From: Fonticula alba ATCC 38817
Taxonomy: Eukaryota; Protista; Nucleariida
Assembly: GCA_000388065.2 (NCBI GenBank)
Contig: KB932217.1
Length of the DNA: 26,365 nt
Direction: 5' to 3' (one strand)
How positions within the stretch are numbered: position 1 is the first letter of the stretch; every line of letters starts with the position of its first letter. A model generated the notes under the pieces. It did not search any database. It worked only from the letters and a program-made list of their open reading frames with translations, and was not told the origin of the DNA. A program made the position numbers and the translations under genes. Below are positions 420 to 12,378 of this stretch, in pieces.

Positions 420-3400
420 CTAGTGCTGGCGCACAAGATACTCCTTGGCCTCCATCTCGTCCAGCAGCTCGTCCACATAATCCTGGAAGTCGCCCTTGTA
501 CGGCTGCACACGCACCACGCAATCGACCAGGGGGGGGGGGGGGGGGGGGGGTCAGTCCCATGGCCCGCGACCGCCCGCCACAACGTGAGGGGAGAGGGGC
601 GGAAAAAGGAAAGAAAGAGGGAAGAAGCAAAAGAAGGAAGGAGGCAAAAGCAACATACCGACACCGTGCAGTCATCCTTGCACACCCAGATCTCATTGCA
701 CACCTGCTCAATGAGGCTGACATTGTGGGTGACCACCACCACGCCGCCCTCGAATTCGTTCAGCGCCCGGACCAGGGCATCCACCGTCTCCAAGTCCAGG
801 TGGTTGGTCGGCTCATCCAGCAGCAGAATGTGCGCCTGGGTCAGCTGGATCTCCACCATGCACACGCGGGACTTCTGCCCACCGGACAGGGTGCGCATGC
901 GGTGCTCATGCACATTCCCCGGCAGGCCAATGGTCCCCAGGTACTTGCGAGCATCCTGATAGGGCACATTGAACTTGTCCATCAGATGCTGCACCGCGCT
1001 CTTGTTCAAATCCAACTGATCCACCGAGTGCTGCGAGTACACCGCAATCCGGAGCTTGGGGTTGTGCTGGACCTCCCCCTCGTCCGGGATCAAATCCCGC
1101 GTGATGAGCTTCAGCAGGGTGGACTTGCCCGTGCCATTGGCACCGACAATGGCAATGCGACTGCTGGTGTCCATGCCGAAGGACACCCCGCGGAAGAGCG
1201 TCCGCCGGCCGGGATACCCGAAGGACACCCCGTCCACCTTCAGCAGCACCTGGTTGGCCAGCTCCGGCGCCGGGGTGAACCCCAGCCGCACGAAATACTC
1301 GTCCACCGGCTGCAAAAGCTGCTCCTCCTGGTTGTCATCCCCATCGTCGTGGGACTTCTTGCTGCCGCCGCGGTCCTTGCGCGTGCTCAGGACCTTGGTC
1401 CGCTCCGCCCGCCGGGCCTTGCTGTCCGTGGTCTTGGACTTGCTCAAGTCCATGGTCAGCTTGCCGGACCGCTTGAGGGCCTTGATGCGCTTCTGCTGCT
1501 TCTCATACGCATCCCGGTCCTGGTCCAGCTTCAGGTTGAACTGCCGCTCGAAGTTGCTGTAGTCGCCCCGATAGTGGAAGAGCTTCTGCTGCCAGATGTG
1601 CAGGATGTCCGAGCAGACGCTCGTCAGGAAGTCCCGGTCGTGGGACACCACCACCAGCGTGTTGCGCCAATTTTGCAGGTAGCTCTCCAGCCAGATGACC
1701 GCATGCAAGTCCAGATGGTTGGTCGGCTCATCGAGCAGCAGCAGCCGCGGCTTCCGGAACAGGGCGCACGCCAGGGCAATGCGCATGCGCCAGCCACCGG
1801 AGAACTCCCGCGTGGCCATCTGCTTCATGTTCTCATCGAACTGCAGACCACTGAGAATGGCGGATGCGCTGTGTGCGTGTGTGCGTGCGTGTGTGCGTGC
1901 GTGTGGGCGTGTGTGCGTAAACGTGTGTGCGTGTGTGCGTGTGTGCGTAAACGTGTGTGCGTGTGTGCGTGTGTGCGTAAACGTGTGTGCGTGTGTGCGT
2001 GTGTGCGTGTGTCATGGGTGAGTGTGGGGCCTGTTTTGTGCATGTGCCAGAAAAAGGATGCCCCCCCTGCCCCACCCACAGCCGACCAGGCAGCACGTAC
2101 CGCGGCAGCGCGCTGTCCGCCTCGATGAAGATCAGACGCTCATACACCTTGTTCAGGCGCTCGGTCTCCTCCATGGTCGGCTCGTCGATGGCCAGCAGGC
2201 GATCACGCTCGGCCAGCAGGCGCGTGCGCATCTCGTCACTGTTGATGACGGTCTGCAGGGCCGACACATCGTTGGCCGGGGCCTCCTGCTGCACGATGTG
2301 AATGTCGATGTGCCGCGGCACCCGGAACTGCCCATCCCGCGCCACAATGTGATTCAGCAGCGTCGACTTGCCGGTGCCATTGTACCCGACCAGGCCGTAC
2401 CGCCGGCCGTGGCTCAGGTTCAGGTTCGAGTCCTTGAACAGCGTCTTGCCGCCCATATGAATGGAGAAGTTGTGCACATTGATGTTGTCATCGGTCGGCA
2501 TGCTGACATCGTCATACTCATCCTCGCCGAGGAGGTCCTCCTGCTTGCGCTCCTGTGCACCGGCCAGGGGAGGGGGGAGGGGGGGGGGGGNNNNNNNNNN
2601 NNNNNNNNNNNNNNNNNNNNNNNNNNNNNNNNNNNNNNNNNNNNNNNNNNNNNNNNNNNNNNNNNNNNNNNNNNNNNNNNNNNNNNNNNNNNNNNNNNNN
2701 NNNNNNNNNNNNNNNNNNNNNNNNNNNNNNNNNNNNNNNNNNNNNNNNNNNNNNNNNNNNNNNNNNNNNNNNNNNNNNNNNNNNNNNNNNNNNNNNNNNN
2801 NNNNNNNNNNNNNNNNNNNNNNNNNNNNNNNNNNNNNNNNNNNNNNNNNNNNNNNNNNNNNNNNNNNNNNNNNNNNNNNNNNNNNNNNNNNNNNNNNNNN
2901 NNNNNNNNNNNNNNNNNNNNNNNNNNNNNNNNNNNNNNNNNNNNNNNNNNNNNNNNNNNNNNNNNNNNNNNNNNNNNNNNNNNNNNNNNNNNNNNNNNNN
3001 NNNNNNNNNNNNNNNNNNNNNNNNNNNNNNNNNNNNNNNNNNNNNNNNNNNNNNNNNNNNNNNNNNNNNNNNNNNNNNNNNNNNNNNNNNNNNNNNNNNN
3101 NNNNNNNNNNNNNNNNNNNNNNNNNNNNNNNNNNNNNNNNNNNNNNNNNNNNNNNNNNNNNNNNNNNNNNNNNNNNNNNNNNNNNNNNNNNNNNNNNNNN
3201 NNNNNNNNNNNNNNNNNNNNNNNNNNNNNNNNNNNNNNNNNNNNNNNNNNNNNNNNNNNNNNNNNNNNNNNNNNNNNNNNNNNNNNNNNNNNNNNNNNNN
3301 NNNNNNNNNNNNNNNNNNNNNNNNNNNNNNNNNNNNNNNNNNNNNNNNNNNNNNNNNNNNNNNNNNNNNNNNNNNNNNNNNNNNNNNNNNNNNNNNNNNN

Positions 3401-3751
3401 NNNNNNNNNNNNNNNNNNNNNNNNNNNNNNNNNNNNNNNNNNNNNNNNNNNNNNNNNNNNNNNNNNNNNNNNNNNNNNNNNNNNNNNNNNNNNNNNNNNN
3501 NNNNNNNNNNNNNNNNNNNNNNNNNNNNNNNNNNNNNNNNGCTCCGGCGAGGCATCCGCAAAGGAGGGAACATCATCATCATCCGAGTCATCGAAGCGGT
3601 TCTTCTTGCCGCCCTTCTTGCCGGCGGCCTTCTTGGCCTTGGCGGAGGTCGGCGGGGCCACCTCCACGGCGGCGGCGTCCGCGAACGAGGGCACGTCGTC
3701 GTCCGAGTCCGAGTCGTACCGGGAGGCCTTACGGCCACCGCGCTTCTTCAT
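420..3751 (-). CDS. ABC-F family ATPase (ABCF1/GCN20-like translation factor; subfamily unresolved)
   Basis: Exons (minus): 3751->3541 (runs into the gap; MKKRGGRKASRYDSDSDDD...), 2552->2101, 1868->659, 503->420 (TAG). Two NBDs and no TM segments: GYNGTGKST / FSGGW / LLLLDEPTNHLD and GANGTGKST / LSGGQKSRV / ILLLDEPTNHLD. Intron phases close (CG|C = Arg; TCG|CCG). Exon(s) inside gap 2591-3540 are unseen. Confidence 0.93.
1911..2000. repeat. Three perfect 30-bp tandem copies inside ABC-F intron 1869-2100
   Basis: gtgtgcgtaaacgtgtgtgcgtgtgtgcgt at 1911-1940, 1941-1970 and 1971-2000, embedded in (GT/GC)n microsatellite. Confidence 0.92.
2591..3540. other. Assembly gap (950 N) inside the ABC-F gene
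   Basis: N run preceded by a poly-G tract. Confidence 0.99.
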
Positions 3752-6175
3752 GGTGTGCAACTGCGAGGAGGAGCGAGAGGGGGCGTGTGTGTGAGAGAGA
3801 GAGAGAGACGAGGAGTCAGGATCAGAGAGGGAGGAAAGAGAGGGAGGGAGATCGGCGGGAAAGGGCACGCAATGACACAAGGGCATACATGGGTGGGGTG
3901 GGGCGGGAGTGAGGGAGGGGAGGAAGGGGGGTGGTGGGGTAGGGGGGAGAGAGAGAGAGAGAGAGAGGGAAGAGAGAGAGCAGCCGGGGGAGGGGGGTGC
4001 TCTTGCGGTGAAGTGTGCAGGTCGCACCAGGTCGTGAGGGGGGGATTGCGTCATGTGAAATAGCCCGTCCACCGGCCGGGGGGCGGAGGCGCCGGCGGTT
4101 CGGCCCCCGACCCCCCGCACAATCAGCGGTCGACCGCGTGCGGGAGCCCAAGGAGCCACACACGCGCGCGCTCGCGGGGCTCGCCTCTCCCGCCCCGAGC
4201 TGACTAGCACCCGCAGAGAGAAAGCGAGAAGCGCCTCCTGCACAGGGCGCGGGGCGAGAGAAGACCACCGCGAACGACAGACCAGCGCGCAGAGGATGCC
4301 CCCATTGCGCGCGCGACAGCGGCCACAGCAGCCACAGCGGCCCGGGTTAGGGACGCCCGCGGCGGGCTTCCCCACGCGGCTTGGCGCGCATGCCAACCCA
4401 GCCTCCCCCGGCCAGCCGGAGCCACCGCCAGGGGGGGGGGGGGGGGCAGACACACACACACGGCCACACATACGCACAGGCGTCTATGCCTGTGGTTGGT
4501 GCGCCCCGGGCGATGGCTAGACCCTGCTTCGGCGGCACTTGAGACCCCTCGCGTGCGGTGGGACCCGTGGAACGCCATTCCAGGTGCCGACGCAGAAGGC
4601 ACCCCGGGCATGCCGCGTGCACGCCCCCGGATACACGCGCGCGCGCGCGCGCGCGCCAGGATGCCCTCCGTCCCTGCCCCATCGGCCTCGGGGGTGCGCG
4701 CAGCCCGATCGCGCGCGCGCGCGCGCGCACACGCCCGTTGGACGAAACAAGACCGCTGAGGCGGGGACGGCGGCGGGGACGGCGGCGGCGGGCCGTCGGA
4801 TCGATCCAGCCGATCGGTCGAACATGGCATGCTCACACGGCCCACGGCGGGGGGGGCACAACCTGAGACCAGCCCACAACTCCCCGCAGGCGGGCGCGGC
4901 CCAGCTCCGAAGGTGCCTGTCCTGACTGGCGTCGGGGGGGATGTGGGGTGTGGCACCCCGGGCCGCCGGGCCGCGGGAGGGGCTCCCCACGCCCAAGCAG
5001 CGAGGAGCAAGCGGCAGCCGGACTCACACGGACCCCGAGCCAAGCCCATGGCCGGTCCCTCACGCGCCGTGACAATACCCGCCCCAGGAGGGGCCCTTCT
5101 TGTCCCGGACCACGAGATATCGAGGGAGACCCTTCTCTGTGGCCAGCGCCGTGGCCGTGGCTGCTGGCCGGCGGGCCGCTCGAGGGCGCACACACTCCGG
5201 CTTGCCAGCGGGTCACCGGCCGGCGCCATCGCAAGATGCCCGGGTGAGGGGGGGGGGGGGGACACACCGTCACGGGGCCACCTTCGGCGGTTCGCCAGAC
5301 GACCTGGAAGATCTTGGCCGCCGGCCCAGCCAGGCACCCTGGGCCGGAGCCGGCGAGAGTGTCCGCCGGCGTGGAGACAAGCCCAATCCCGCTGGCGGGG
5401 GGGATGGGAATCCCGGCCAGGCTGGAGGTGGGAGCAGGCCCCCCGCACCTCCAAGGTGCTATGTGTGGCATGCCGCCCCGTCGCCTCCACCAGGGCAAAT
5501 GCATCGCCATGGAGGCACTCTGCGGCCCTCGGGGCGACATCTCGTCCATTCGAGGACCAGCCTATGGCCGAGCAGAGGTTGCTTCAAGATGGACATCCGC
5601 TTGCCGAGGAGAGATGGGCACTGGCGGGTGCCTGTTGGACGGCGTGGTCGGCACAAGCTACCCCCCCCCCCCCCCCAGCCACTCTCGCAGGGCAAAGCTG
5701 GTGCCGGATGCGGAGCAGGACAGCCCAGGCCACAGAGGGCAAGCTTCCTTTCAAAAAGGAAAGGAAGAGAGTAGGAGCGTGTGTGTGTGTATGAGAGAGC
5801 GAGAGACACTTCGTGCTGCTGGGCCACGAATCGGCGGCGCGGACAGATCTCCCGCCAGACTTCCAGCACTCGGAAAAAATGCACCGCACCCGAGCGCCCG
5901 GACGCGGTGTGGCGACGCGCACGGCCAGTGGGACGGCCACGCCCCCTGCCCCTGGAGAAGGCCACTGCCGGGCCATTTCCGTCGGCCCATCTCTTTGGAC
6001 GGCAAGCTTCCTTCTTTCGAGCTCTCGCACATGTGTATTATGGTGTTGGCCCCCGCGTGCACGGGATATACGCGGGAGGGAGAAGATCGGAAAAAAAAAA
6101 GAAAAAGAAAAAGGTCGGGCCCTCGTAAAAGGGGGCCCAAACGCCTGCGTGCTTCTCTGTGTCGTGCGCGCGGCT

Positions 6176-8498
6176 TTAGAAGCCCGCGGCCTGGAGAGCC
6201 TGGCGCAGGGCCGCGATCTTCTTGTGAACGTCGGCAATCTGCCCGGCCACCAGGTCCACGTCCAGAGTGAAGACCTTGACCTTCTTGTCGGTGGCGCGGC
6301 GATCGAAGGCCCGGATGGCCTGGAGCAGGGCCCCGGCATCCTTCAGCAGGTCGGCCTCGGTGGAGAAGCGCTCGTAGAGCTCCTTGTTCCGGCGCATGGT
6401 GGTCAGCAGGTCATCCACCTCGGCATGCTTGACATTGGCAATGGGCGACGGGGCGGCCGGGTCCTCGCGGTGGGAGACCACCAACGAAGAGAAGGCCGAC
6501 AGCATCTGGGAGTACTCGCTGGCGGCGATGTCCTTGGGACTGGACTCCACCAGGGCGCCCTGGCGCCAGCGGAAGAGCCCGGCCGCCGCGGGGGACAGGT
6601 TGGCCAGGTCGTCGGGGCCGTCCTCGGCCCCGGCCGGCTTCTCCGGCAGCAGCGACAGGAGCTTGTTCTTGGAGGGATTCAGCGTGCCGCTGGTGATGGA
6701 AGTGCGAGCCTTGCGCACGGCATCCGCGCCGGCATTCACCTGGCGCAGGGTCTCATCCAGCGCCTCCATGTGGCTGAGGAGCCCGCCCTCCAGGGGGGCC
6801 GTGGCCTCCGGGCTGGCGGCCAACACCGCCGGGAAGAGCTGGCGGTCCAGCTGACGCACGCGCGCCAGCACCTCGGCCACCAGGTCCGCCGCATCGGCCG
6901 CCACCTCGTTGGGGATCCACACCGGGGCGATGATATCCACCAGGCCAGCGGGCAGGAAGCCGGCCATGAAGTCGGTGGCAAAGTTCTTGAGGTCACCCGG
7001 GTGGATCTGGGTGGGGAAGGGAGGGGGGATCCGGGAGATAGGTGTGAACGGCGAGAGGGAGGAAAGATGGGCAGGGGGGGCGGAGGGGGAGGAGGGGGCG
7101 GAGAGAGTAGAGAAGACAGAGAAGACAGGAAAGGCAAAAAAACAGAGAAGACAGAAAAGGCAAAAAAACAGAGAAGACAGAAAAGGCAAAAAAAAAACAG
7201 AGAAGACAGAAAAGGCAAAAAAAAAACAGAGAAGACAGGAAAGGCAAAAAAACAGAAAAGCAGAGAAGACAGAAAAGCAGAGAAGACAGAAAAGCAGAAA
7301 AATAGAGAAGACGGAAAGGACGGAAGGAACAGAGCAAGGTCAGCAAGCGCGGCCCATGGCAACGGCACACACGCATCCGGGCAGAGAAGAGACACCCAGG
7401 CACAGCGCGCACCTTCTTGTCGGCGAAGTTGACGCCCACATCAGCCAGGGGGAAAAGCCCCGGGGCCGAGGCCTCCAGGCTGGCCCGCAGGGCGGCCGTC
7501 TGCTCCGGGAAGTGAGCCAGCACCGGGGCCACCACATGCTGCACAAAGGCCAGCAGGACATTGCGCGTGGTGTTGCCCTCCTCGCAGAAGATGGCACGCA
7601 CGGCCTTCTGCGTGGCCGAGCGCCCGCCATCCAGGAAGGGAGTGGTCCGGGCCGCCGCGCCGAACAGCTGCCCCGAGGACAGGTCCGACACAAAGCGCGA
7701 GGTCAGGTGCGCGCTCGGGATGGCCAGCGTCCCGGTCGACGAGCCGGCCAGGTTCGACAGCTGGGTCACCTTGTAGTCGGACAGATGCCGGCGGCCGAAC
7801 TGGAAGATGGAGATCTGCTCCAGCCCGCCCACCTGCACATCGGCCCCGAGGAAGAGCCCGTTCAGCCCGCGGAAGAGGGGGCTCAGATCGCGCGACAAGA
7901 CCGACGCCGCGGCCGGATCGAACCCCAGGCTCATGGACATGGCCTCGCGCTCGGTCACCATGTTGGTCAGCCGGTAGAAGTCCATCATGTAGGAGGGGTT
8001 CTCCAGGAGCTCCTGCCCGTGGTGGAAGCGCACAGCCGCGGCGTCCAGGCCGAGGTGCCCCAGCAGGGTGGAGATGATGGACTGCGGCAGGGGGCGAGGG
8101 ACGCGAAGGGGGGGGGGGGGGGGAGGTGCCGTCGCCAAGGTCAGGGCACAGCCACCGGGCAGGGGGAGAACGGGCAAGCGAGGAGCCGGGGAAAAGGCGC
8201 CCACAGCCGAGCAGGGCAACAGGCAGAAGGCAGGGGGGAGGAGACACGCACCTGGTAGGCCAGCGACCGCGCGCGGATCTTGTCCAGGGACGCAGGGTTG
8301 TTCATGAAGGCGTGGAGCTCATCCAGGTGGACGATCACCTGCGCGCCGGCCTTCAGCAGCAGGGCCATCGTCACCACCGGGAACAGCAGGTCCATGCTGG
8401 GCTTCGGCAGGGGCGACAGGGAGAAGAGGACCTTCAGCTCGGTGACGGGCTTCTTGGGCAGGGTGCCCAGGAGCTTGTAGTCGCAGTTGAGCCACGAC
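6176..8498 (-). CDS. Tyrosyl-tRNA synthetase-like protein, predicted catalytically inactive, with C-terminal helical/coiled-coil extension (5' end missing)
   Basis: Exons (minus): 8498->8252, 8081->7413, 7006->6176 (TAA); more than 580 aa with no internal stop. Aligns by eye to TyrRS: LLKAGAQVIVHLDELHAF, DVQVGGLEQISIF, FCEEGNTTRNVLLAFVQHVVAP, IHPGDLKN. HIGH reads SMDL and KMSAS reads QLFGA. The phase-2 acceptor at 8499-8500 implies an upstream exon, probably in gap 8533-8977. Confidence 0.85.
7100..7320. repeat. Purine-rich minisatellite (about 27-30 bp unit AGAGAAGACAG(A/G)AAAGGCAAAAAAAC) in intron 7007-7412
   Basis: About 5 near-identical units with variable A-run length, followed by shorter AGAGAAGACAGAAAAGC units. 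Confidence 0.88.
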
Positions 8499-8532
8499 CT
8501 GAGCGCGCGCGCGTGTGTGTGTGTGGGGGGGG

Positions 8533-8977
8533 NNNNNNNNNNNNNNNNNNNNNNNNNNNNNNNNNNNNNNNNNNNNNNNNNNNNNNNNNNNNNNNNNNNN
8601 NNNNNNNNNNNNNNNNNNNNNNNNNNNNNNNNNNNNNNNNNNNNNNNNNNNNNNNNNNNNNNNNNNNNNNNNNNNNNNNNNNNNNNNNNNNNNNNNNNNN
8701 NNNNNNNNNNNNNNNNNNNNNNNNNNNNNNNNNNNNNNNNNNNNNNNNNNNNNNNNNNNNNNNNNNNNNNNNNNNNNNNNNNNNNNNNNNNNNNNNNNNN
8801 NNNNNNNNNNNNNNNNNNNNNNNNNNNNNNNNNNNNNNNNNNNNNNNNNNNNNNNNNNNNNNNNNNNNNNNNNNNNNNNNNNNNNNNNNNNNNNNNNNNN
8901 NNNNNNNNNNNNNNNNNNNNNNNNNNNNNNNNNNNNNNNNNNNNNNNNNNNNNNNNNNNNNNNNNNNNNNNNNNNNN
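8533..8977. other. Assembly gap (445 N), likely containing the first exon of the TyrRS-like gene
   Basis: N run preceded by poly-G; the adjacent exon begins with a phase-2 acceptor. Confidence 0.95.
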
Positions 8978-9502
8978 GTGGGTGTGGCTCCGGCCGGGGC
9001 GCCAGGCCGGGCCGGGCCTCGCCACACGGGGCCGCGGCCCTGCTCATGCCGCTGCCGCTGCCGCTCGCCCTTCCAGGTGGCATGCCCCCCCGCGCGCAGG
9101 GCGGGGAATCGGTCGTGCGCACCGCACGGGGAACGCCGCGGCCGAAGTCGGCGGATTTCCTGCGCCCGAGGGTTGGCATCTCGGCCGACGGACGACCTGG
9201 TCCGCACCTGCGCATGCCTGCCCCGGTGCGCGGAGGTGGCGTGTCCCCGCCCCCCCCTTGCCGGTGGTTCTCCGGCCACCGCCCCCGGCAGCCCGGGCCC
9301 CCGCCACCGCGGGAACGTCTGCGCGGGCCTGCCCCCCCCCCCCCTCGCCCCGGCCCCGCCAGGCCGGCGAGGTGGCCCTTGGCCCCATGCCGTGCGGGCG
9401 CAAATGTGCCCAGAATGCCCCCCCGCCCCCCGGGTGGGAGAGAAAAGGCCGCCCCCGGGCGTCCCTGGCGCGCGCGCTGGGCCCTCATCGTCCCCGACGC
9501 CC
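8978..9502. promoter_or_regulatory. Probable bidirectional promoter region between the divergent TyrRS-like and TyrRS genes
   Basis: Position only: GC-rich sequence with no recognisable ORF between two divergent 5' ends. No core-promoter motif identified; flanked by gaps. Confidence 0.4.
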
Positions 9503-9781
9503 NNNNNNNNNNNNNNNNNNNNNNNNNNNNNNNNNNNNNNNNNNNNNNNNNNNNNNNNNNNNNNNNNNNNNNNNNNNNNNNNNNNNNNNNNNNNNNNNNN
9601 NNNNNNNNNNNNNNNNNNNNNNNNNNNNNNNNNNNNNNNNNNNNNNNNNNNNNNNNNNNNNNNNNNNNNNNNNNNNNNNNNNNNNNNNNNNNNNNNNNNN
9701 NNNNNNNNNNNNNNNNNNNNNNNNNNNNNNNNNNNNNNNNNNNNNNNNNNNNNNNNNNNNNNNNNNNNNNNNNNNNNNNNN
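9503..9781. other. Assembly gap (279 N)
   Basis: N run ending 19 nt before the TyrRS ATG. Confidence 0.99.
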
Positions 9782-9800
9782 CCGGCGCCACAGCGCCAGC

Positions 9801-10961
9801 ATGGACTCGATCGAGCTGATCACCAAGAACTTGCAGGAGCACCTGTCCATCAACATCCTGGCCGACGCGCTGAACCGCCAGGATGACGCGGCCCGAATCT
9901 ACTGGGGCACTGCGCCGACCGGCAAGCCGCACATCGGCTACTTCGTGCCGCTGGTGAAGATCGCCGAGTTCCTGAAGGCCGGCTGCCAGATGACCATCCT
10001 CTTTGCCGACCTGCACGCCTTCCTGGACCACAACAAGTCCACCCTGGACGTGCTGGAGCACCGCTCCTACTACTACGAGGTGCGTGCGCCGCCTCGGGGC
10101 CCATGTCGGCGCGCACATGCACACAGATGTCACACGCACACATGCGCACACGCACACACGCACGCACACACACACGCGCGCGCCATGGCACCCTGCACCG
10201 CCGTCTCCCGACCACCTCGACTCACCCCCGCCCGTCCGCAACACACACCTGCGCGCGCGCGTCATAACACCCCGCCCCCGCCGTGCCCCCTCGGCCCACG
10301 ACACACACACACGCAGCGCGTCATCACCCAGGCCCTCGTGTCCATCGGCGTCCCCATCGACCAGCTCACCTTCTCGCGCGGCATGAGCTACCAGCTGAAG
10401 TCCGACTACTCGAAGGACGTGCTGCAGCTGTGCAAGCTGGTGTCGCTGGTGGATGCCAAGCGCGCCGGTGCCGAGGTCGTCAAGCAGGTGGACTCGCCCC
10501 TGCTGTCGGGCATGGTGTACCCCCTGCTGCAGGCCCTCGACGAGCAGTACCTCCTGGTGGACGCGCAATTTGGCGGCGTGGACCAGCGCAAGATCTTCAC
10601 CTTCGCCTACATGTTCCTCCCGCGCCTGGGCTACCGCCGCCGGGCGCACCTGCTCAACCCCATGGTCCCCGGGCTGCAGGGGGCCAAGATGTCCGCCTCG
10701 CAGGCCGACTCCAAGATTGACCTGCTGGACTCGCGCGAGACCATCTTCTCCAAGATCGCCACGGCCCAGTGCTCCCCCGGCGAGATCGAGGGCAACCCGC
10801 TGCTCTGCTTCGCGCAGTATGTCCTCTTCCCGGCGCGCGCCCTGAACCCGGCCGGCGGCCCGGTGACCCTGGCCCCGGCGGCCGGCGGCGCCCCGCGCGC
10901 CTTCGACACCTTCGACCAGCTGCGCGACGCCTTCCAGGCCGGCGAGGTACGCCCGCCCGCC

Positions 10962-10992
<31 letters not shown>

Positions 10993-12378
10993 GCCTCGGC
11001 ACCGGTCCGGGCCATGCCGCCCCCTTCCTCTTGCTGCTCCCCCCATGTGCTGCGCTCGGACGTTGCAAGGCACTGACTTTCCGGCGGCGGATGGGGATCT
11101 CCCCCCTCTTCCCCCTCCCTCCTCCTCCCCTGCCCCGGCCCACCATAGGTCACCCCCGACGACCTGCGCGCCCTGGTGTCGACCGGCATCTCGGACCTGA
11201 TCGATCCCATCCGCGAGCAGTTCACCGGCGACGCGCGCTGGGCCGAGTCCGAGGCCAAGGGCTACCCCACGGCCGAGGCCACCGGGGCCGCCCCCTGCGA
11301 CGACCTGCTCGACGAGCTGGCCGCCATGGACTCGGGCAAGATGACGGCGGAGCTGGTGGCCGCCGTGGCCGAGTGGAAGGCCGGGCGCACGGCCTCCTCG
11401 GATCTCGGGCCCCTGCGCCGGGCCGTGGCCCCGGCCCTGGCCCATGAGTATGCCCACCGTCTGGCCACGGCCTCCGGCGACCGGCTGGCCGCCTTCCGCG
11501 CCCGGCTGGCCGATCAGGCCCAGCTCCGGGCCCTGGTCCAGAGCGTGGCCAGCTATGTGGCCGAGCAGCCGGCCGCCGCCGGGGCGGCCGAGGTGGATGC
11601 CACCGCCGCCGGGCCGCTCGGGCTCGGGTCCGTGGCGGCCCTGCTGACGCAGCTCCTGTCGCGCCTGCAGCCGGTGGACACTGCCGCCGCCGCCGCCGGT
11701 GGGGAGGATGGCGCTGCCGGCCTCTCGGCCGTGGCCGCCGTGCAGGGGCCCCTGGCCCAGTCGGTGGCCGACATCGGCGCCAAGGCGCCCAACTGCGACT
11801 TCGTCGACATCGGCCGGACCCTGCTGGCCGACATGGCCAGCCTGGCCGGCCTGGTGGAGCGCATTTCCGCCAACCTCACCGACGCCGACCAGGTGGCCCC
11901 CCTGCTGCTGACCCTGTGCGTGCAGCTGAAGACCCTGAGCACCAACCTGAACAGCATGCGCCCGGCGTGCGATCAGTCGCTGTCGAAGTCGCGCGCGCGC
12001 GACTTCAAGGCCAAGCTCGACCAGCTGGCCGCCCTGGCGCAGGAGCTCCTGCCCGGGTGCACCCTGCTGGCTGGGCTGCTGCAGTGTGTGGCCGCGTGGC
12101 TCGGGGCCGCCCGGCGCCTCGGCACCGAGGGCACCCTGGCCGAGGTGGCCGGCCAGCAGCCGGTGCCGGCCTTCCTGGCCGCCGTGAATGCCGACCTGCT
12201 GGCCTTCCTGGACGGCTCGTCGCAGCTGATCCTCACCTTCCCGGCGGAGCTGCTGGCCCAGATCTTCGACGTGGCCAGCGACCTGAACACCGATGTCAGC
12301 GCCTTCATCGACACGCTGGACGCGCCGTTTGTCGGCTTCCTCAGCGCCGCCATGGCTGCCCTGGAGGCGGCTGCCTAA
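9801..12378 (+). CDS. YARS1: Cytosolic tyrosyl-tRNA synthetase (yeast/animal type) with about 360-aa C-terminal helical extension
   Basis: Exons 9801-10079, 10317-10946, 11149-12378 (712 aa). ITKNLQE, IYWGTAPTGKPHIGYF (HIGH), ADLHAFLD, YPLLQALDEQYL, QFGGVDQRKIF, HLLNPMVPGLQGAKMSAS (KMSKS) and KGYP follow yeast Tys1 closely. Confidence 0.97.

What the first reader, a model, noticed from the sequence alone, without database searches (positions are those of the whole stretch)
6176..12378. Head-to-head pair of an active TyrRS and a catalytically dead TyrRS paralogue: candidate two-gene heterodimeric synthetase
Seen in sequence: the minus-strand gene aligns with the plus-strand TyrRS through the catalytic and anticodon domains (21 of 61 identities in my hand alignment of the shared first block), yet the catalytic elements are replaced. 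IYWG becomes VLFS (Tyr-pocket Tyr lost), PHIGY becomes PSMDL, YPLLQALD becomes SPLFRGLN (Y/Q/D amino-acid-binding residues lost) and KMSAS becomes QLFGA. It keeps more than 580 open codons, intact splice sites and GC3-rich codons, so it does not look like a decaying pseudogene. Established: TyrRS is an obligate dimer in which tRNA spans both subunits, and trypanosomatid TyrRS is a single-chain pseudo-dimer with one dead active site. Inference: the same asymmetry may be encoded here by two divergently transcribed genes forming an active/inactive heterodimer, or the dead copy is a regulatory or scaffold pseudo-enzyme.
Basis: partly seen in the sequence, partly recalled or inferred. Interest (0 to 1): 0.9.

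Follow-up and report, generated by a model that had tools for sequence, protein, structure and literature searches.

The report
Split active/dead tyrosyl-tRNA synthetase gene pair
In the slime mould Fonticula alba a normal tyrosyl-tRNA synthetase gene sits head to head with an equally expressed, catalytically dead copy that keeps the tRNA anticodon-binding motifs the active copy has lost, which looks like a two-gene version of the lopsided "pseudo-dimer" enzyme so far known only as one fused protein.

Summary
The window is Fonticula alba. The plus gene is H696_06033, a 712-aa canonical cytosolic TyrRS. The minus gene is H696_06032, annotated "hypothetical". It is a TyrRS homologue in sequence and predicted fold, but HIGH, KMSKS and the tyrosine-pocket residues are all replaced.

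cDNA contigs from two samples show both genes spliced exactly as modelled, at similar depth.

The gaps do not interrupt any visible exon. They do hide the dead gene's start codon and the active gene's 5' leader, and no read bridges them, so the head-to-head arrangement rests on the scaffold alone.

New here: ten double-length TyrRS found in the searches (named ones from flatworms and nematodes) show reciprocal loss. The active unit loses the anticodon-contact motifs FCExGN, RPEK(F/Y)GG and HPGDLK, and the dead unit keeps them. The Fonticula pair shows the same split across two genes, though the dead copy's RPEK loop is itself weak. An AU test does not reject a lineage-specific duplication. No relative of the dead copy exists in public data.

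Best reading (about 0.5): an active/inactive heterodimer produced by subfunctionalisation. Physical association is untested. Some fungal single-gene TyrRS carry similarly eroded motifs with no known partner.

The scan also noted this locus separately as s1-065864.

The parts
8252..8497 (-). Dead paralogue (H696_06032), first visible exon. It covers the N-terminal helix, the VLFS stretch (ex-YWG) and PSMDL (ex-HIGH). Base 8498 would complete a codon from sequence lost in the gap.
7413..8081 (-). Dead paralogue exon B. It covers the CP1 helix, SPLFRGLN (ex-YPxLQALD), QLFGA (ex-KMSKS), a retained FCEEGN (7572-7589) and a weak RPEK loop, LRASLEAS (7467-7490).
6176..7006 (-). Dead paralogue exon C. 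HPGDLK is retained at 6986-7003. A helical C-terminal extension of about 255 aa follows (6179-6940), with no detectable relatives. Stop codon TAA at 6176-6178.
7007..7412 (-). Intron 2 of the dead paralogue. It carries a 26-29-nt CT-rich tandem array at 7109-7325.
8082..8251 (-). Intron 1 of the dead paralogue, spliced out in the cDNA contigs.
8533..8977 (.). Assembly gap 1. It hides the 5' end and start codon of the dead paralogue.
8978..9502 (.). GC-rich island between the two gaps, presumed shared promoter region. RNA depth here is only 0-6, so it belongs to neither mRNA.
9503..9781 (.). Assembly gap 2. It hides the 41-nt 5' leader of the active TyrRS mRNA.
9801..10079 (+). Active TyrRS (H696_06033) exon 1. 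ATG at 9801, IYWG at 9897-9908, PHIGY at 9927-9941.
10317..10946 (+). Active TyrRS exon 2. YPLLQALD at 10518-10541 and KMSAS at 10686-10700 are intact. The anticodon-contact motifs are altered: QCSPGE at 10767-10784 and APAAGGA at 10872-10892.
11149..12378 (+). Active TyrRS exon 3. TPDDLR (in place of HPGDLK) at 11152-11169, then the end of the core, then an Ala-rich helical C-terminal extension of about 367 aa (11275-12375) in place of the EMAP II domain found in animals and chytrids. Stop codon at 12376-12378.

Best explanation
The two genes are products of a duplication of the cytosolic TyrRS gene in the Fonticula lineage, followed by complementary degeneration.
- H696_06033 keeps the complete active site but has lost most side chains that clamp anticodon base G34.
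- H696_06032 has lost ATP and tyrosine binding and the KMSKS loop, but keeps the TyrRS fold, the CP1 helix and the anticodon-contact motifs FCEEGN and HPGDLK.

TyrRS is an obligate dimer that binds each tRNA across both subunits. The most likely working form is therefore an active/dead heterodimer with one active site (plus gene) and one good anticodon site (minus gene). That would be the unfused equivalent of the single-chain pseudo-dimer of trypanosomatids, nematodes and flatworms.

Shown: homology, loss of the catalytic motifs, splicing, expression, predicted fold, and the reciprocal motif pattern.
Inferred: heterodimerisation, division of labour, and co-regulation from a shared divergent promoter.
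For: 1. The catalytic motifs are all replaced in the minus gene and intact in the plus gene. The plus gene matches yeast TyrRS at E 1e-112.
2. cDNA contigs from two samples carry both mRNAs correctly spliced. Contig depth is 84 vs 88 in one sample and 148 vs 127 in the other.
3. The AF2 model of the dead copy has a core pLDDT of mostly 84-95. Foldseek's top hits are human and yeast TyrRS, TM 0.66-0.69.
4. At columns conserved in at least 80% of canonical TyrRS, the dead copy keeps 10/12 in the anticodon domain but 28/83 in the catalytic domain. Its retained columns overlap those retained by the dead units of fused enzymes (Fisher p 0.004).
5. In the ten different double-length TyrRS recovered, the active unit has lost F244 and R279 and in most cases the rest of the RPEK(F/Y)GG loop and HPGDLK, while the dead unit keeps them. 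Fonticula active reads Q-A-G-T-D and Fonticula dead F-R-E-H-D at columns 244/279/283/305/308.
6. These columns correspond to MjTyrRS F261, H283 and D286, which sandwich and hydrogen-bond G34 (PMC10135938).
7. On anticodon-domain columns alone, the active copy's nearest rows are active units of pseudo-dimers. On catalytic columns alone, they are canonical enzymes.
8. A clade of the two Fonticula copies is not rejected (AU p 0.70), and its likelihood is higher than that of the free search.
9. [quoted passage not shown]
Against: - No test of physical association was possible, because no multimer prediction is offered.
- The active copy still has D308, P306, L309 and C245, and it keeps 10/12 of the most conserved anticodon-domain columns.
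- Its anticodon-domain branch is no more stretched, relative to the median, than its catalytic branch: 2.2x against 2.6x.
- Deleting the RPEKFGG loop did not abolish MjTyrRS activity (PMC10135938).
- Orbiliomycete TyrRS, a Fusarium paralogue and two unnamed proteins show the same motif loss with no known partner.
- The dead copy's own RPEK loop is degenerate (LRASLEAS, no aromatic residue at the aligned position).
- Its dimer-axis segment reads LSRDLSP where canonical enzymes have LSGLLYP.
- Contig depth is a poor measure of expression.
- Gene adjacency is unverified across two gaps.
Confidence: 0.5

Rival explanations
1. The dead paralogue is a maintained pseudo-enzyme with a job of its own, and the active TyrRS works as an ordinary homodimer. 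Possible roles are a tRNA-Tyr or RNA anticodon-binding factor, a regulator, or a scaffold acting through its 255-aa helical tail.
For: - The anticodon-domain motifs and the fold are retained.
- It has a long private C-terminal extension unrelated to that of the active gene.
- The active copy keeps D308 and most conserved anticodon-domain columns.
- Fungal single-gene TyrRS with similarly eroded motifs appear to manage alone.
Against: - This does not explain why the active copy lost exactly the residues that active units of fused pseudo-dimers lose.
- It does not explain the near-equal transcript depth in two samples.
- It does not explain retention of the CP1 helix shared with dead units of fused enzymes.
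Confidence: 0.3
2. The paralogue is a functionless duplicate that is still transcribed and has not yet been disrupted.
For: - It has no relatives in 15 billion proteins.
- Its branch is extremely long, 4.76 substitutions per site.
- Long open frames are common in this GC-rich genome, even on antisense strands.
Against: - Despite that divergence, 581 codons across three exons stay open and in phase, with GC3 of 0.93.
- Splicing is exact.
- Conservation is strongly uneven: 10/12 anticodon-domain columns against 28/83 catalytic columns. Neutral decay would not produce that.
- Expression equals that of an essential gene.
Confidence: 0.1
3. The head-to-head arrangement is a scaffolding artefact and the two genes are not neighbours. 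This concerns the arrangement only and is compatible with any of the functional readings.
For: - Two gaps (445 and 279 N) and a 525-bp island separate the genes.
- No cDNA contig or read bridged them.
- Only one assembly holds these proteins.
Against: - Both mRNA 5' ends point into the gaps, as expected for a divergent pair.
- Nothing contradicts the scaffold.
Confidence: 0.1

Closest known systems
Double-length pseudo-dimeric TyrRS of trypanosomatids (L. major 3P0J; T. brucei).
   Same: - One TyrRS unit has a full active site but damaged anticodon-contact motifs.
- The other unit lacks HIGH/KMSKS and the tyrosine pocket but keeps FCExGN and HPGDLK.
- Both derive from the eukaryotic cytosolic enzyme.
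   Different: - Here the two units are separate, divergently oriented genes, each with its own unrelated C-terminal extension.
- Association is not enforced by a linker and has not been shown.
- The dead unit is more diverged than any fused one: 108 bits against the canonical HMM, where fused dead units score 80-298 but with better catalytic remnants.
- The dead unit's own RPEK loop is weak.
Canonical homodimeric cytosolic TyrRS (yeast TYS1 2DLC, human YARS1 1N3L)
   Same: The plus gene is an orthologue (E 1e-112 and 1e-106). All catalytic residues are present, and the SPPDLK-like variant of HPGDLK also occurs in Dikarya.
   Different: The plus gene lacks F244, R279/E281/K282, the loop aromatic residue and H305 all together, and it has no EMAP II domain. 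Yeast keeps FCSPGN and RPEKFGG.
Two-gene heteromeric synthetases and dead aaRS paralogues (bacterial GlyRS and PheRS alpha2beta2; ThrRS-L, LeuRS2, as reviewed in PMC9437257)
   Same: The aaRS function, or a derivative of it, is spread over two gene products, or a duplicate has lost aminoacylation activity.
   Different: In GlyRS and PheRS the subunits are not paralogous halves of a former homodimer. No heterodimeric class Ic (TyrRS/TrpRS) enzyme turned up in my literature searches.

Membership tests
Class Ic tyrosyl-tRNA synthetase, archaeal/eukaryotic type (PF00579), tested on the minus-strand paralogue | Sequence and fold homology to the TyrRS Rossmann, CP1 and helical anticodon domains | tested here: met
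   PF00579 at 22.4 bits, cutoff 21.1. Human TyrRS E 1e-22. AF2 model with Foldseek TM 0.66-0.69 to 7rou and 2dlc.
Class Ic tyrosyl-tRNA synthetase, archaeal/eukaryotic type (PF00579), tested on the minus-strand paralogue | HIGH signature (ATP binding) | tested here: not met
   PHIGY is replaced by PSMDL at 8387-8401.
Class Ic tyrosyl-tRNA synthetase, archaeal/eukaryotic type (PF00579), tested on the minus-strand paralogue | KMSKS loop | tested here: not met
   KMSAS is replaced by QLFGA at 7656-7670. There is a 15-aa insertion upstream, and pLDDT is low over residues 150-200.
Class Ic tyrosyl-tRNA synthetase, archaeal/eukaryotic type (PF00579), tested on the minus-strand paralogue | Tyrosine-pocket residues (human Y39, Y166, Q170, D173) | tested here: not met
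   Y->L, Y->S, Q->R and D->N.
Class Ic tyrosyl-tRNA synthetase, archaeal/eukaryotic type (PF00579), tested on the minus-strand paralogue | Anticodon G34 contacts (Mj F261, H283, D286; FC(E/P) motif) | tested here: inconclusive
   F244, C245, R279, H305, D308 and K310 are kept. The loop aromatic residue is absent at the aligned position, where the loop reads LRASLEAS.
Class Ic tyrosyl-tRNA synthetase, tested on the plus-strand gene | HIGH, KMSKS and the tyrosine pocket; orthology to cytosolic TyrRS | tested here: met
   PF00579 at 62.6 and 98.8 bits. Yeast TyrRS E 1e-112. It keeps 96-98% of conserved catalytic columns.
Asymmetric TyrRS pseudo-dimer (Leishmania type) | Two TyrRS-like units, one catalytically dead | tested here: met
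Asymmetric TyrRS pseudo-dimer (Leishmania type) | Both units in one polypeptide | tested here: not met
   There are two separate mRNAs on opposite strands and two annotated proteins.
Asymmetric TyrRS pseudo-dimer (Leishmania type) | The active unit has a damaged anticodon-recognition site | tested here: inconclusive
   F244Q, R279A, E281A, K282A, Y283G, H305T and K310R match the pattern of fused active units. However, D308 is kept and no binding data exist.
Asymmetric TyrRS pseudo-dimer (Leishmania type) | The units associate through the canonical dimer interface, and both are needed for activity | not testable with these tools
   No multimer prediction or coordinates were available. The only indirect support is that the CP1 helix Y-x-x-D-x-Y-R-L..VT..EA is retained.

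The most novel reading that the evidence does not exclude
Fonticula alba charges tRNA-Tyr with an obligate heterodimer encoded by two paralogous genes. That would be the first heteromeric class Ic synthetase. It would also be a living example of a homodimer turned into an obligate heterodimer by duplication, degeneration and complementation, and possibly the unfused evolutionary stage that preceded the fused double-length TyrRS seen in other eukaryotes.
Probability: 0.4. Interest if true: 0.8.

Novelty: new variant of a known kind. Interest (0 to 1): 0.66.

Why it matters
Asymmetric TyrRS pseudo-dimers are known only as fused chains, so it is unclear whether asymmetry or fusion came first. An unfused pair would address three points.
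- It would show that reciprocal loss (active site in one copy, anticodon site in the other) can arise and persist between separate genes.
- It would give a clean system for testing half-of-sites reactivity and cross-subunit tRNA binding by mixing subunits.
- It would add a case to the theory of how paralogous heteromers become entrenched.

Two practical results also follow. H696_06032 can be renamed from "hypothetical protein" to a TyrRS-like pseudo-enzyme. And the FCExGN / RPEK(F/Y)GG / HPGDLK signature distinguishes active from dead units across animal and protist double-length TyrRS.

Tried and rejected
- Relatives of the dead copy. The word-based search and the exhaustive phmmer search over 1.84 billion representatives found nothing closer than about 30% identity, so dN/dS and synteny could not be done.
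- C-terminal extensions. There is no similarity between the two, no Pfam hit above threshold, no homologues, and no informative ESM Atlas match by features or structure.
- HPGDLK -> TPDDLR as proof of erosion. I rejected this as a stand-alone argument, because yeast and other Dikarya homodimers carry SPPDLK.
- Mean identity and branch-length ratios. The anticodon-to-catalytic identity ratio of the active copy (0.52) lies in the overlap between canonical enzymes (0.62 +/- 0.07) and pseudo-dimer active units (0.47-0.58), so it does not decide. The same applies to the branch lengths.
- Placing the dead copy on the tree. It remains unresolved because of its long branch.
- A partner gene next to an Orbiliomycete TyrRS with eroded motifs. 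None lies within 10 kb.
- Organisms of the unnamed double-length proteins. Only run accessions were returned.
- P0007 as a close Fonticula relative. It is a truncated double-length TyrRS.
- AFDB cluster search with the model. It returned only ordinary TyrRS entries.

Full report
**Identity and gene models**

The window comes from Fonticula alba. The minus-strand gene is H696_06032, annotated "hypothetical protein", 547 aa (protein P0001). The plus-strand gene is H696_06033, 712 aa, named Tyrosine--tRNA ligase by UniRef (protein P0002).

Reading the DNA gives these models:
- Minus gene: exons 8497..8252, 8081..7413 and 7006..6176, which is 581 visible codons.
- Plus gene: exons 9801..10079, 10317..10946 and 11149..12378.

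The annotated minus model starts at an internal Met (MDLLF) only because the sequence upstream runs into a gap.

**Gap test**

The gaps at 8533-8977 and 9503-9781 lie between the two genes, not inside any visible exon.

I laid Logan contigs from two runs of two samples (X1 and X3) on 6150-12149.
- One contig per run covers 6150-7006 | 7413-8081 | 8252-8496. Another covers 9794-10077 | 10315-10941 | 11147-12149 and beyond.
- The skipped stretches have GT..AG ends on the coding strand. The runs therefore contain cDNA, and both gene models are confirmed, including the frame across every junction.
- The minus contig continues 54 nt (X1) or 83 nt (X3) beyond 8496. The tool skipped the repeat at 8497-8532, so I cannot tell whether the mRNA is colinear there or spliced at 8498.
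- Depth on the island 8978-9502 is only 0-6. The missing 5' end, and the start codon, must therefore lie in gap 1.
- The plus mRNA has a 41-nt leader that does not match 9782-9793.
- Nothing bridges the gaps, so the head-to-head arrangement rests on the scaffold alone.

**The observation**

- BLASTP between the two genes gives 21/62 identities (E 5e-13) for the first block and 23% identity (E 2e-9) for the second.
- Pfam PF00579 scores 62.6 and 98.8 bits on the plus exons, and 22.4 bits (cutoff 21.1) on minus exon B.
- Against PDB sequences, the dead copy matches human cytosolic TyrRS at E 1e-22 over residues 51-310. The active copy matches yeast TyrRS at E 1e-112.
- GC3 is 0.93 in the dead gene and 0.955 in the active gene, against intron GC of 0.51-0.74.
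- Contig depth is 84 vs 88 (X1) and 148 vs 127 (X3) for dead vs active. The tool warns that this is a rough measure.

**Fold**

I ran AlphaFold2 on P0001 with a 50-sequence alignment (A1).
- The core, residues 1-290, has pLDDT of mostly 84-95.
- There is a weak stretch at 150-200, which holds a 15-aa insertion and the former KMSKS loop.
- The C-terminal tail is helical with low to medium confidence.
- Foldseek's best PDB matches are human and yeast TyrRS, with TM by target of 0.66-0.69. AFDB clusters return only TyrRS.

**Relatives**

The exhaustive phmmer search found no protein closer than about 30% identity; only the query itself scored below E 1e-30.

The best hits are ordinary TyrRS and, notably, double-length TyrRS matched in their degenerate unit. 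The neighbouring active gene ranks only at 52.8 bits.

The named double-length proteins come from Macrostomum, Taenia, Heterobilharzia, Mesorhabditis and Heligmosomoides. A lone dead-unit protein comes from the crab Petrolisthes.

**The key comparison**

I aligned every TyrRS unit to an HMM whose columns follow P0002 residues 1-345.

In all ten different double-length proteins:
- The unit that keeps YWG, HIGH, YPxLQALD and KMSxS has lost F244 and R279, and in most cases the rest of the anticodon-domain motifs FCE(P/E)GN, RPEK(F/Y)GG and HPGDLK.
- The catalytically dead unit keeps all three motifs.
- Two proteins have the dead unit first.

These motifs hold the residues equivalent to M. jannaschii F261, H283 and D286, which sandwich and hydrogen-bond anticodon base G34. 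The loop in M. jannaschii is 254-TIKRPEKFGGDL-265 (PMC10135938).

The Fonticula pair shows the same split across two genes:
- Active: QCSPGE / APAAGGA / TPDDLR.
- Dead: FCEEGN / LRASLEAS / HPGDLK.

At columns 244/279/283/305/308 the active copy reads Q-A-G-T-D and the dead copy F-R-E-H-D.

**How strong is it?**

Support:
- At columns conserved in at least 80-90% of canonical enzymes, the active copy keeps 96-98% of catalytic columns. The dead copy keeps 31-34% of catalytic columns but 10/12 anticodon-domain columns.
- The dead copy's retained columns overlap those retained by fused dead units (Fisher p 0.004 over all columns).
- It keeps the CP1 helix pattern Y..D.YRL..VT..EA, which is shared with those units. 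That CP1 forms the class Ic dimer interface is my own background knowledge.
- Of 188 single-unit active TyrRS, 13 lack F244, R279, the loop aromatic residue and H305 together. Four of these are fragments of double-length genes. The others are five Orbiliomycetes, a Fusarium avenaceum paralogue, two unnamed proteins and Fonticula.
- In the full-length tree the active copy falls inside a well-supported (SH-aLRT 98) group made up only of pseudo-dimer active units. With catalytic columns alone its nearest rows are canonical enzymes. With anticodon-domain columns alone they are pseudo-dimer active units. This points to convergence in that domain, although support is weak.

Cautions:
- The active copy keeps D308, P306, L309 and C245.
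- Yeast, an ordinary homodimer, also has SPPDLK.
- Loop deletion does not kill MjTyrRS (PMC10135938).
- The active copy's anticodon-domain branch is not disproportionately long.
- An Arthrobotrys TyrRS with eroded motifs has no TyrRS-like neighbour within 10 kb.

**Origin**

The dead copy sits on a branch of 4.76 substitutions per site and cannot be placed. Constraining the two Fonticula copies to one clade is not rejected (AU p 0.70), and that tree has a likelihood 14 units better than the free quick search. A duplication within the Fonticula lineage is therefore plausible. Shared GC-driven composition may contribute to this result.

The closest canonical sequence by catalytic domain is P0195 (57% identity, unknown organism, GC3 0.76). 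It keeps F244, R279, H305 and D308 and has an EMAP II domain.

**C-terminal extensions**

Both proteins carry long helical tails, about 255 aa on the dead copy and about 367 aa on the active copy. They are unrelated to each other and to anything in Pfam, the protein databases or the ESM Atlas. Their role is unknown. A role in pairing would be pure speculation.

**Verdict**

The paralogue is an expressed, selectively shaped pseudo-enzyme, not a decaying pseudogene.

The heterodimer reading is the best single explanation, at about 0.5, for two reasons. It alone accounts for the reciprocal motif pattern that every fused pseudo-dimer shares. It also fits the near-equal transcript depth of the two genes and the assembled divergent arrangement, which is itself unverified.

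The reading remains inferential. Association, loss of anticodon binding by the active subunit, and gene adjacency are all untested.

I found no description of a two-gene TyrRS heterodimer in the literature searches. That search is limited to open-access text.

Noticed in passing
window 6595: All RNA contigs (X1, X3 and X5) read C where the genome has A. On the minus strand this turns codon TCC (Ser443 of the visible ORF) into GCC (Ala), in the dead gene's C-terminal extension. It is either an assembly error or a strain difference.
   Followed up: partly
P0003, P0004, P0005, P0006, P0010, P0025, P0029, P0044, P0052, P0054, P0277 (proteins): Double-length TyrRS are widespread. Named examples come from flatworms and nematodes, and others are unnamed. 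All show the same reciprocal loss: the active unit loses F244, R279 and mostly the rest of FCExGN, RPEK(F/Y)GG and HPGDLK, and the dead unit keeps them. In P0010 and P0277 the dead unit comes first.
   Followed up: partly
P0215, P0258, P0218, P0264, P0209 (Orbiliomycetes); P0097 (Fusarium avenaceum); L001: These are single-unit, catalytically intact fungal TyrRS whose anticodon-contact motifs are eroded much like those of pseudo-dimer active units. No TyrRS-like gene lies within 10 kb of the Arthrobotrys flagrans gene. Whether an unlinked dead partner exists is unknown.
   Followed up: partly
window 7109-7325: A CT-rich tandem array with a 26-29-nt period and about 6-8 copies sits inside intron 2 of the dead gene. 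CA/GC microsatellites occur in the introns of the active gene (10110-10179 and 10966-10992).
   Followed up: no
window 9782-9793: The active gene's cDNA stops matching the genome at 9794, just after a cacag acceptor-like site, and carries 41 other letters upstream. Either there is a 5'-UTR intron or the gap edge is misassembled.
   Followed up: no
window 6301-6564 and 6497-6833: Short contigs identical or nearly identical to exon C occur in a 2022 gut metatranscriptome (X6) and in a 2024 run labelled as another organism (X5). This probably reflects F. alba presence or carry-over in those samples.
   Followed up: no
window 11275-12375 and 6179-6940: Both TyrRS-like proteins carry long, mutually unrelated, helical, Ala-rich C-terminal extensions with no detectable relatives. 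The EMAP II domain present in animal and chytrid TyrRS is absent.
   Followed up: partly
window 2591-3540: A third assembly gap (950 N) lies elsewhere in the window.
   Followed up: no
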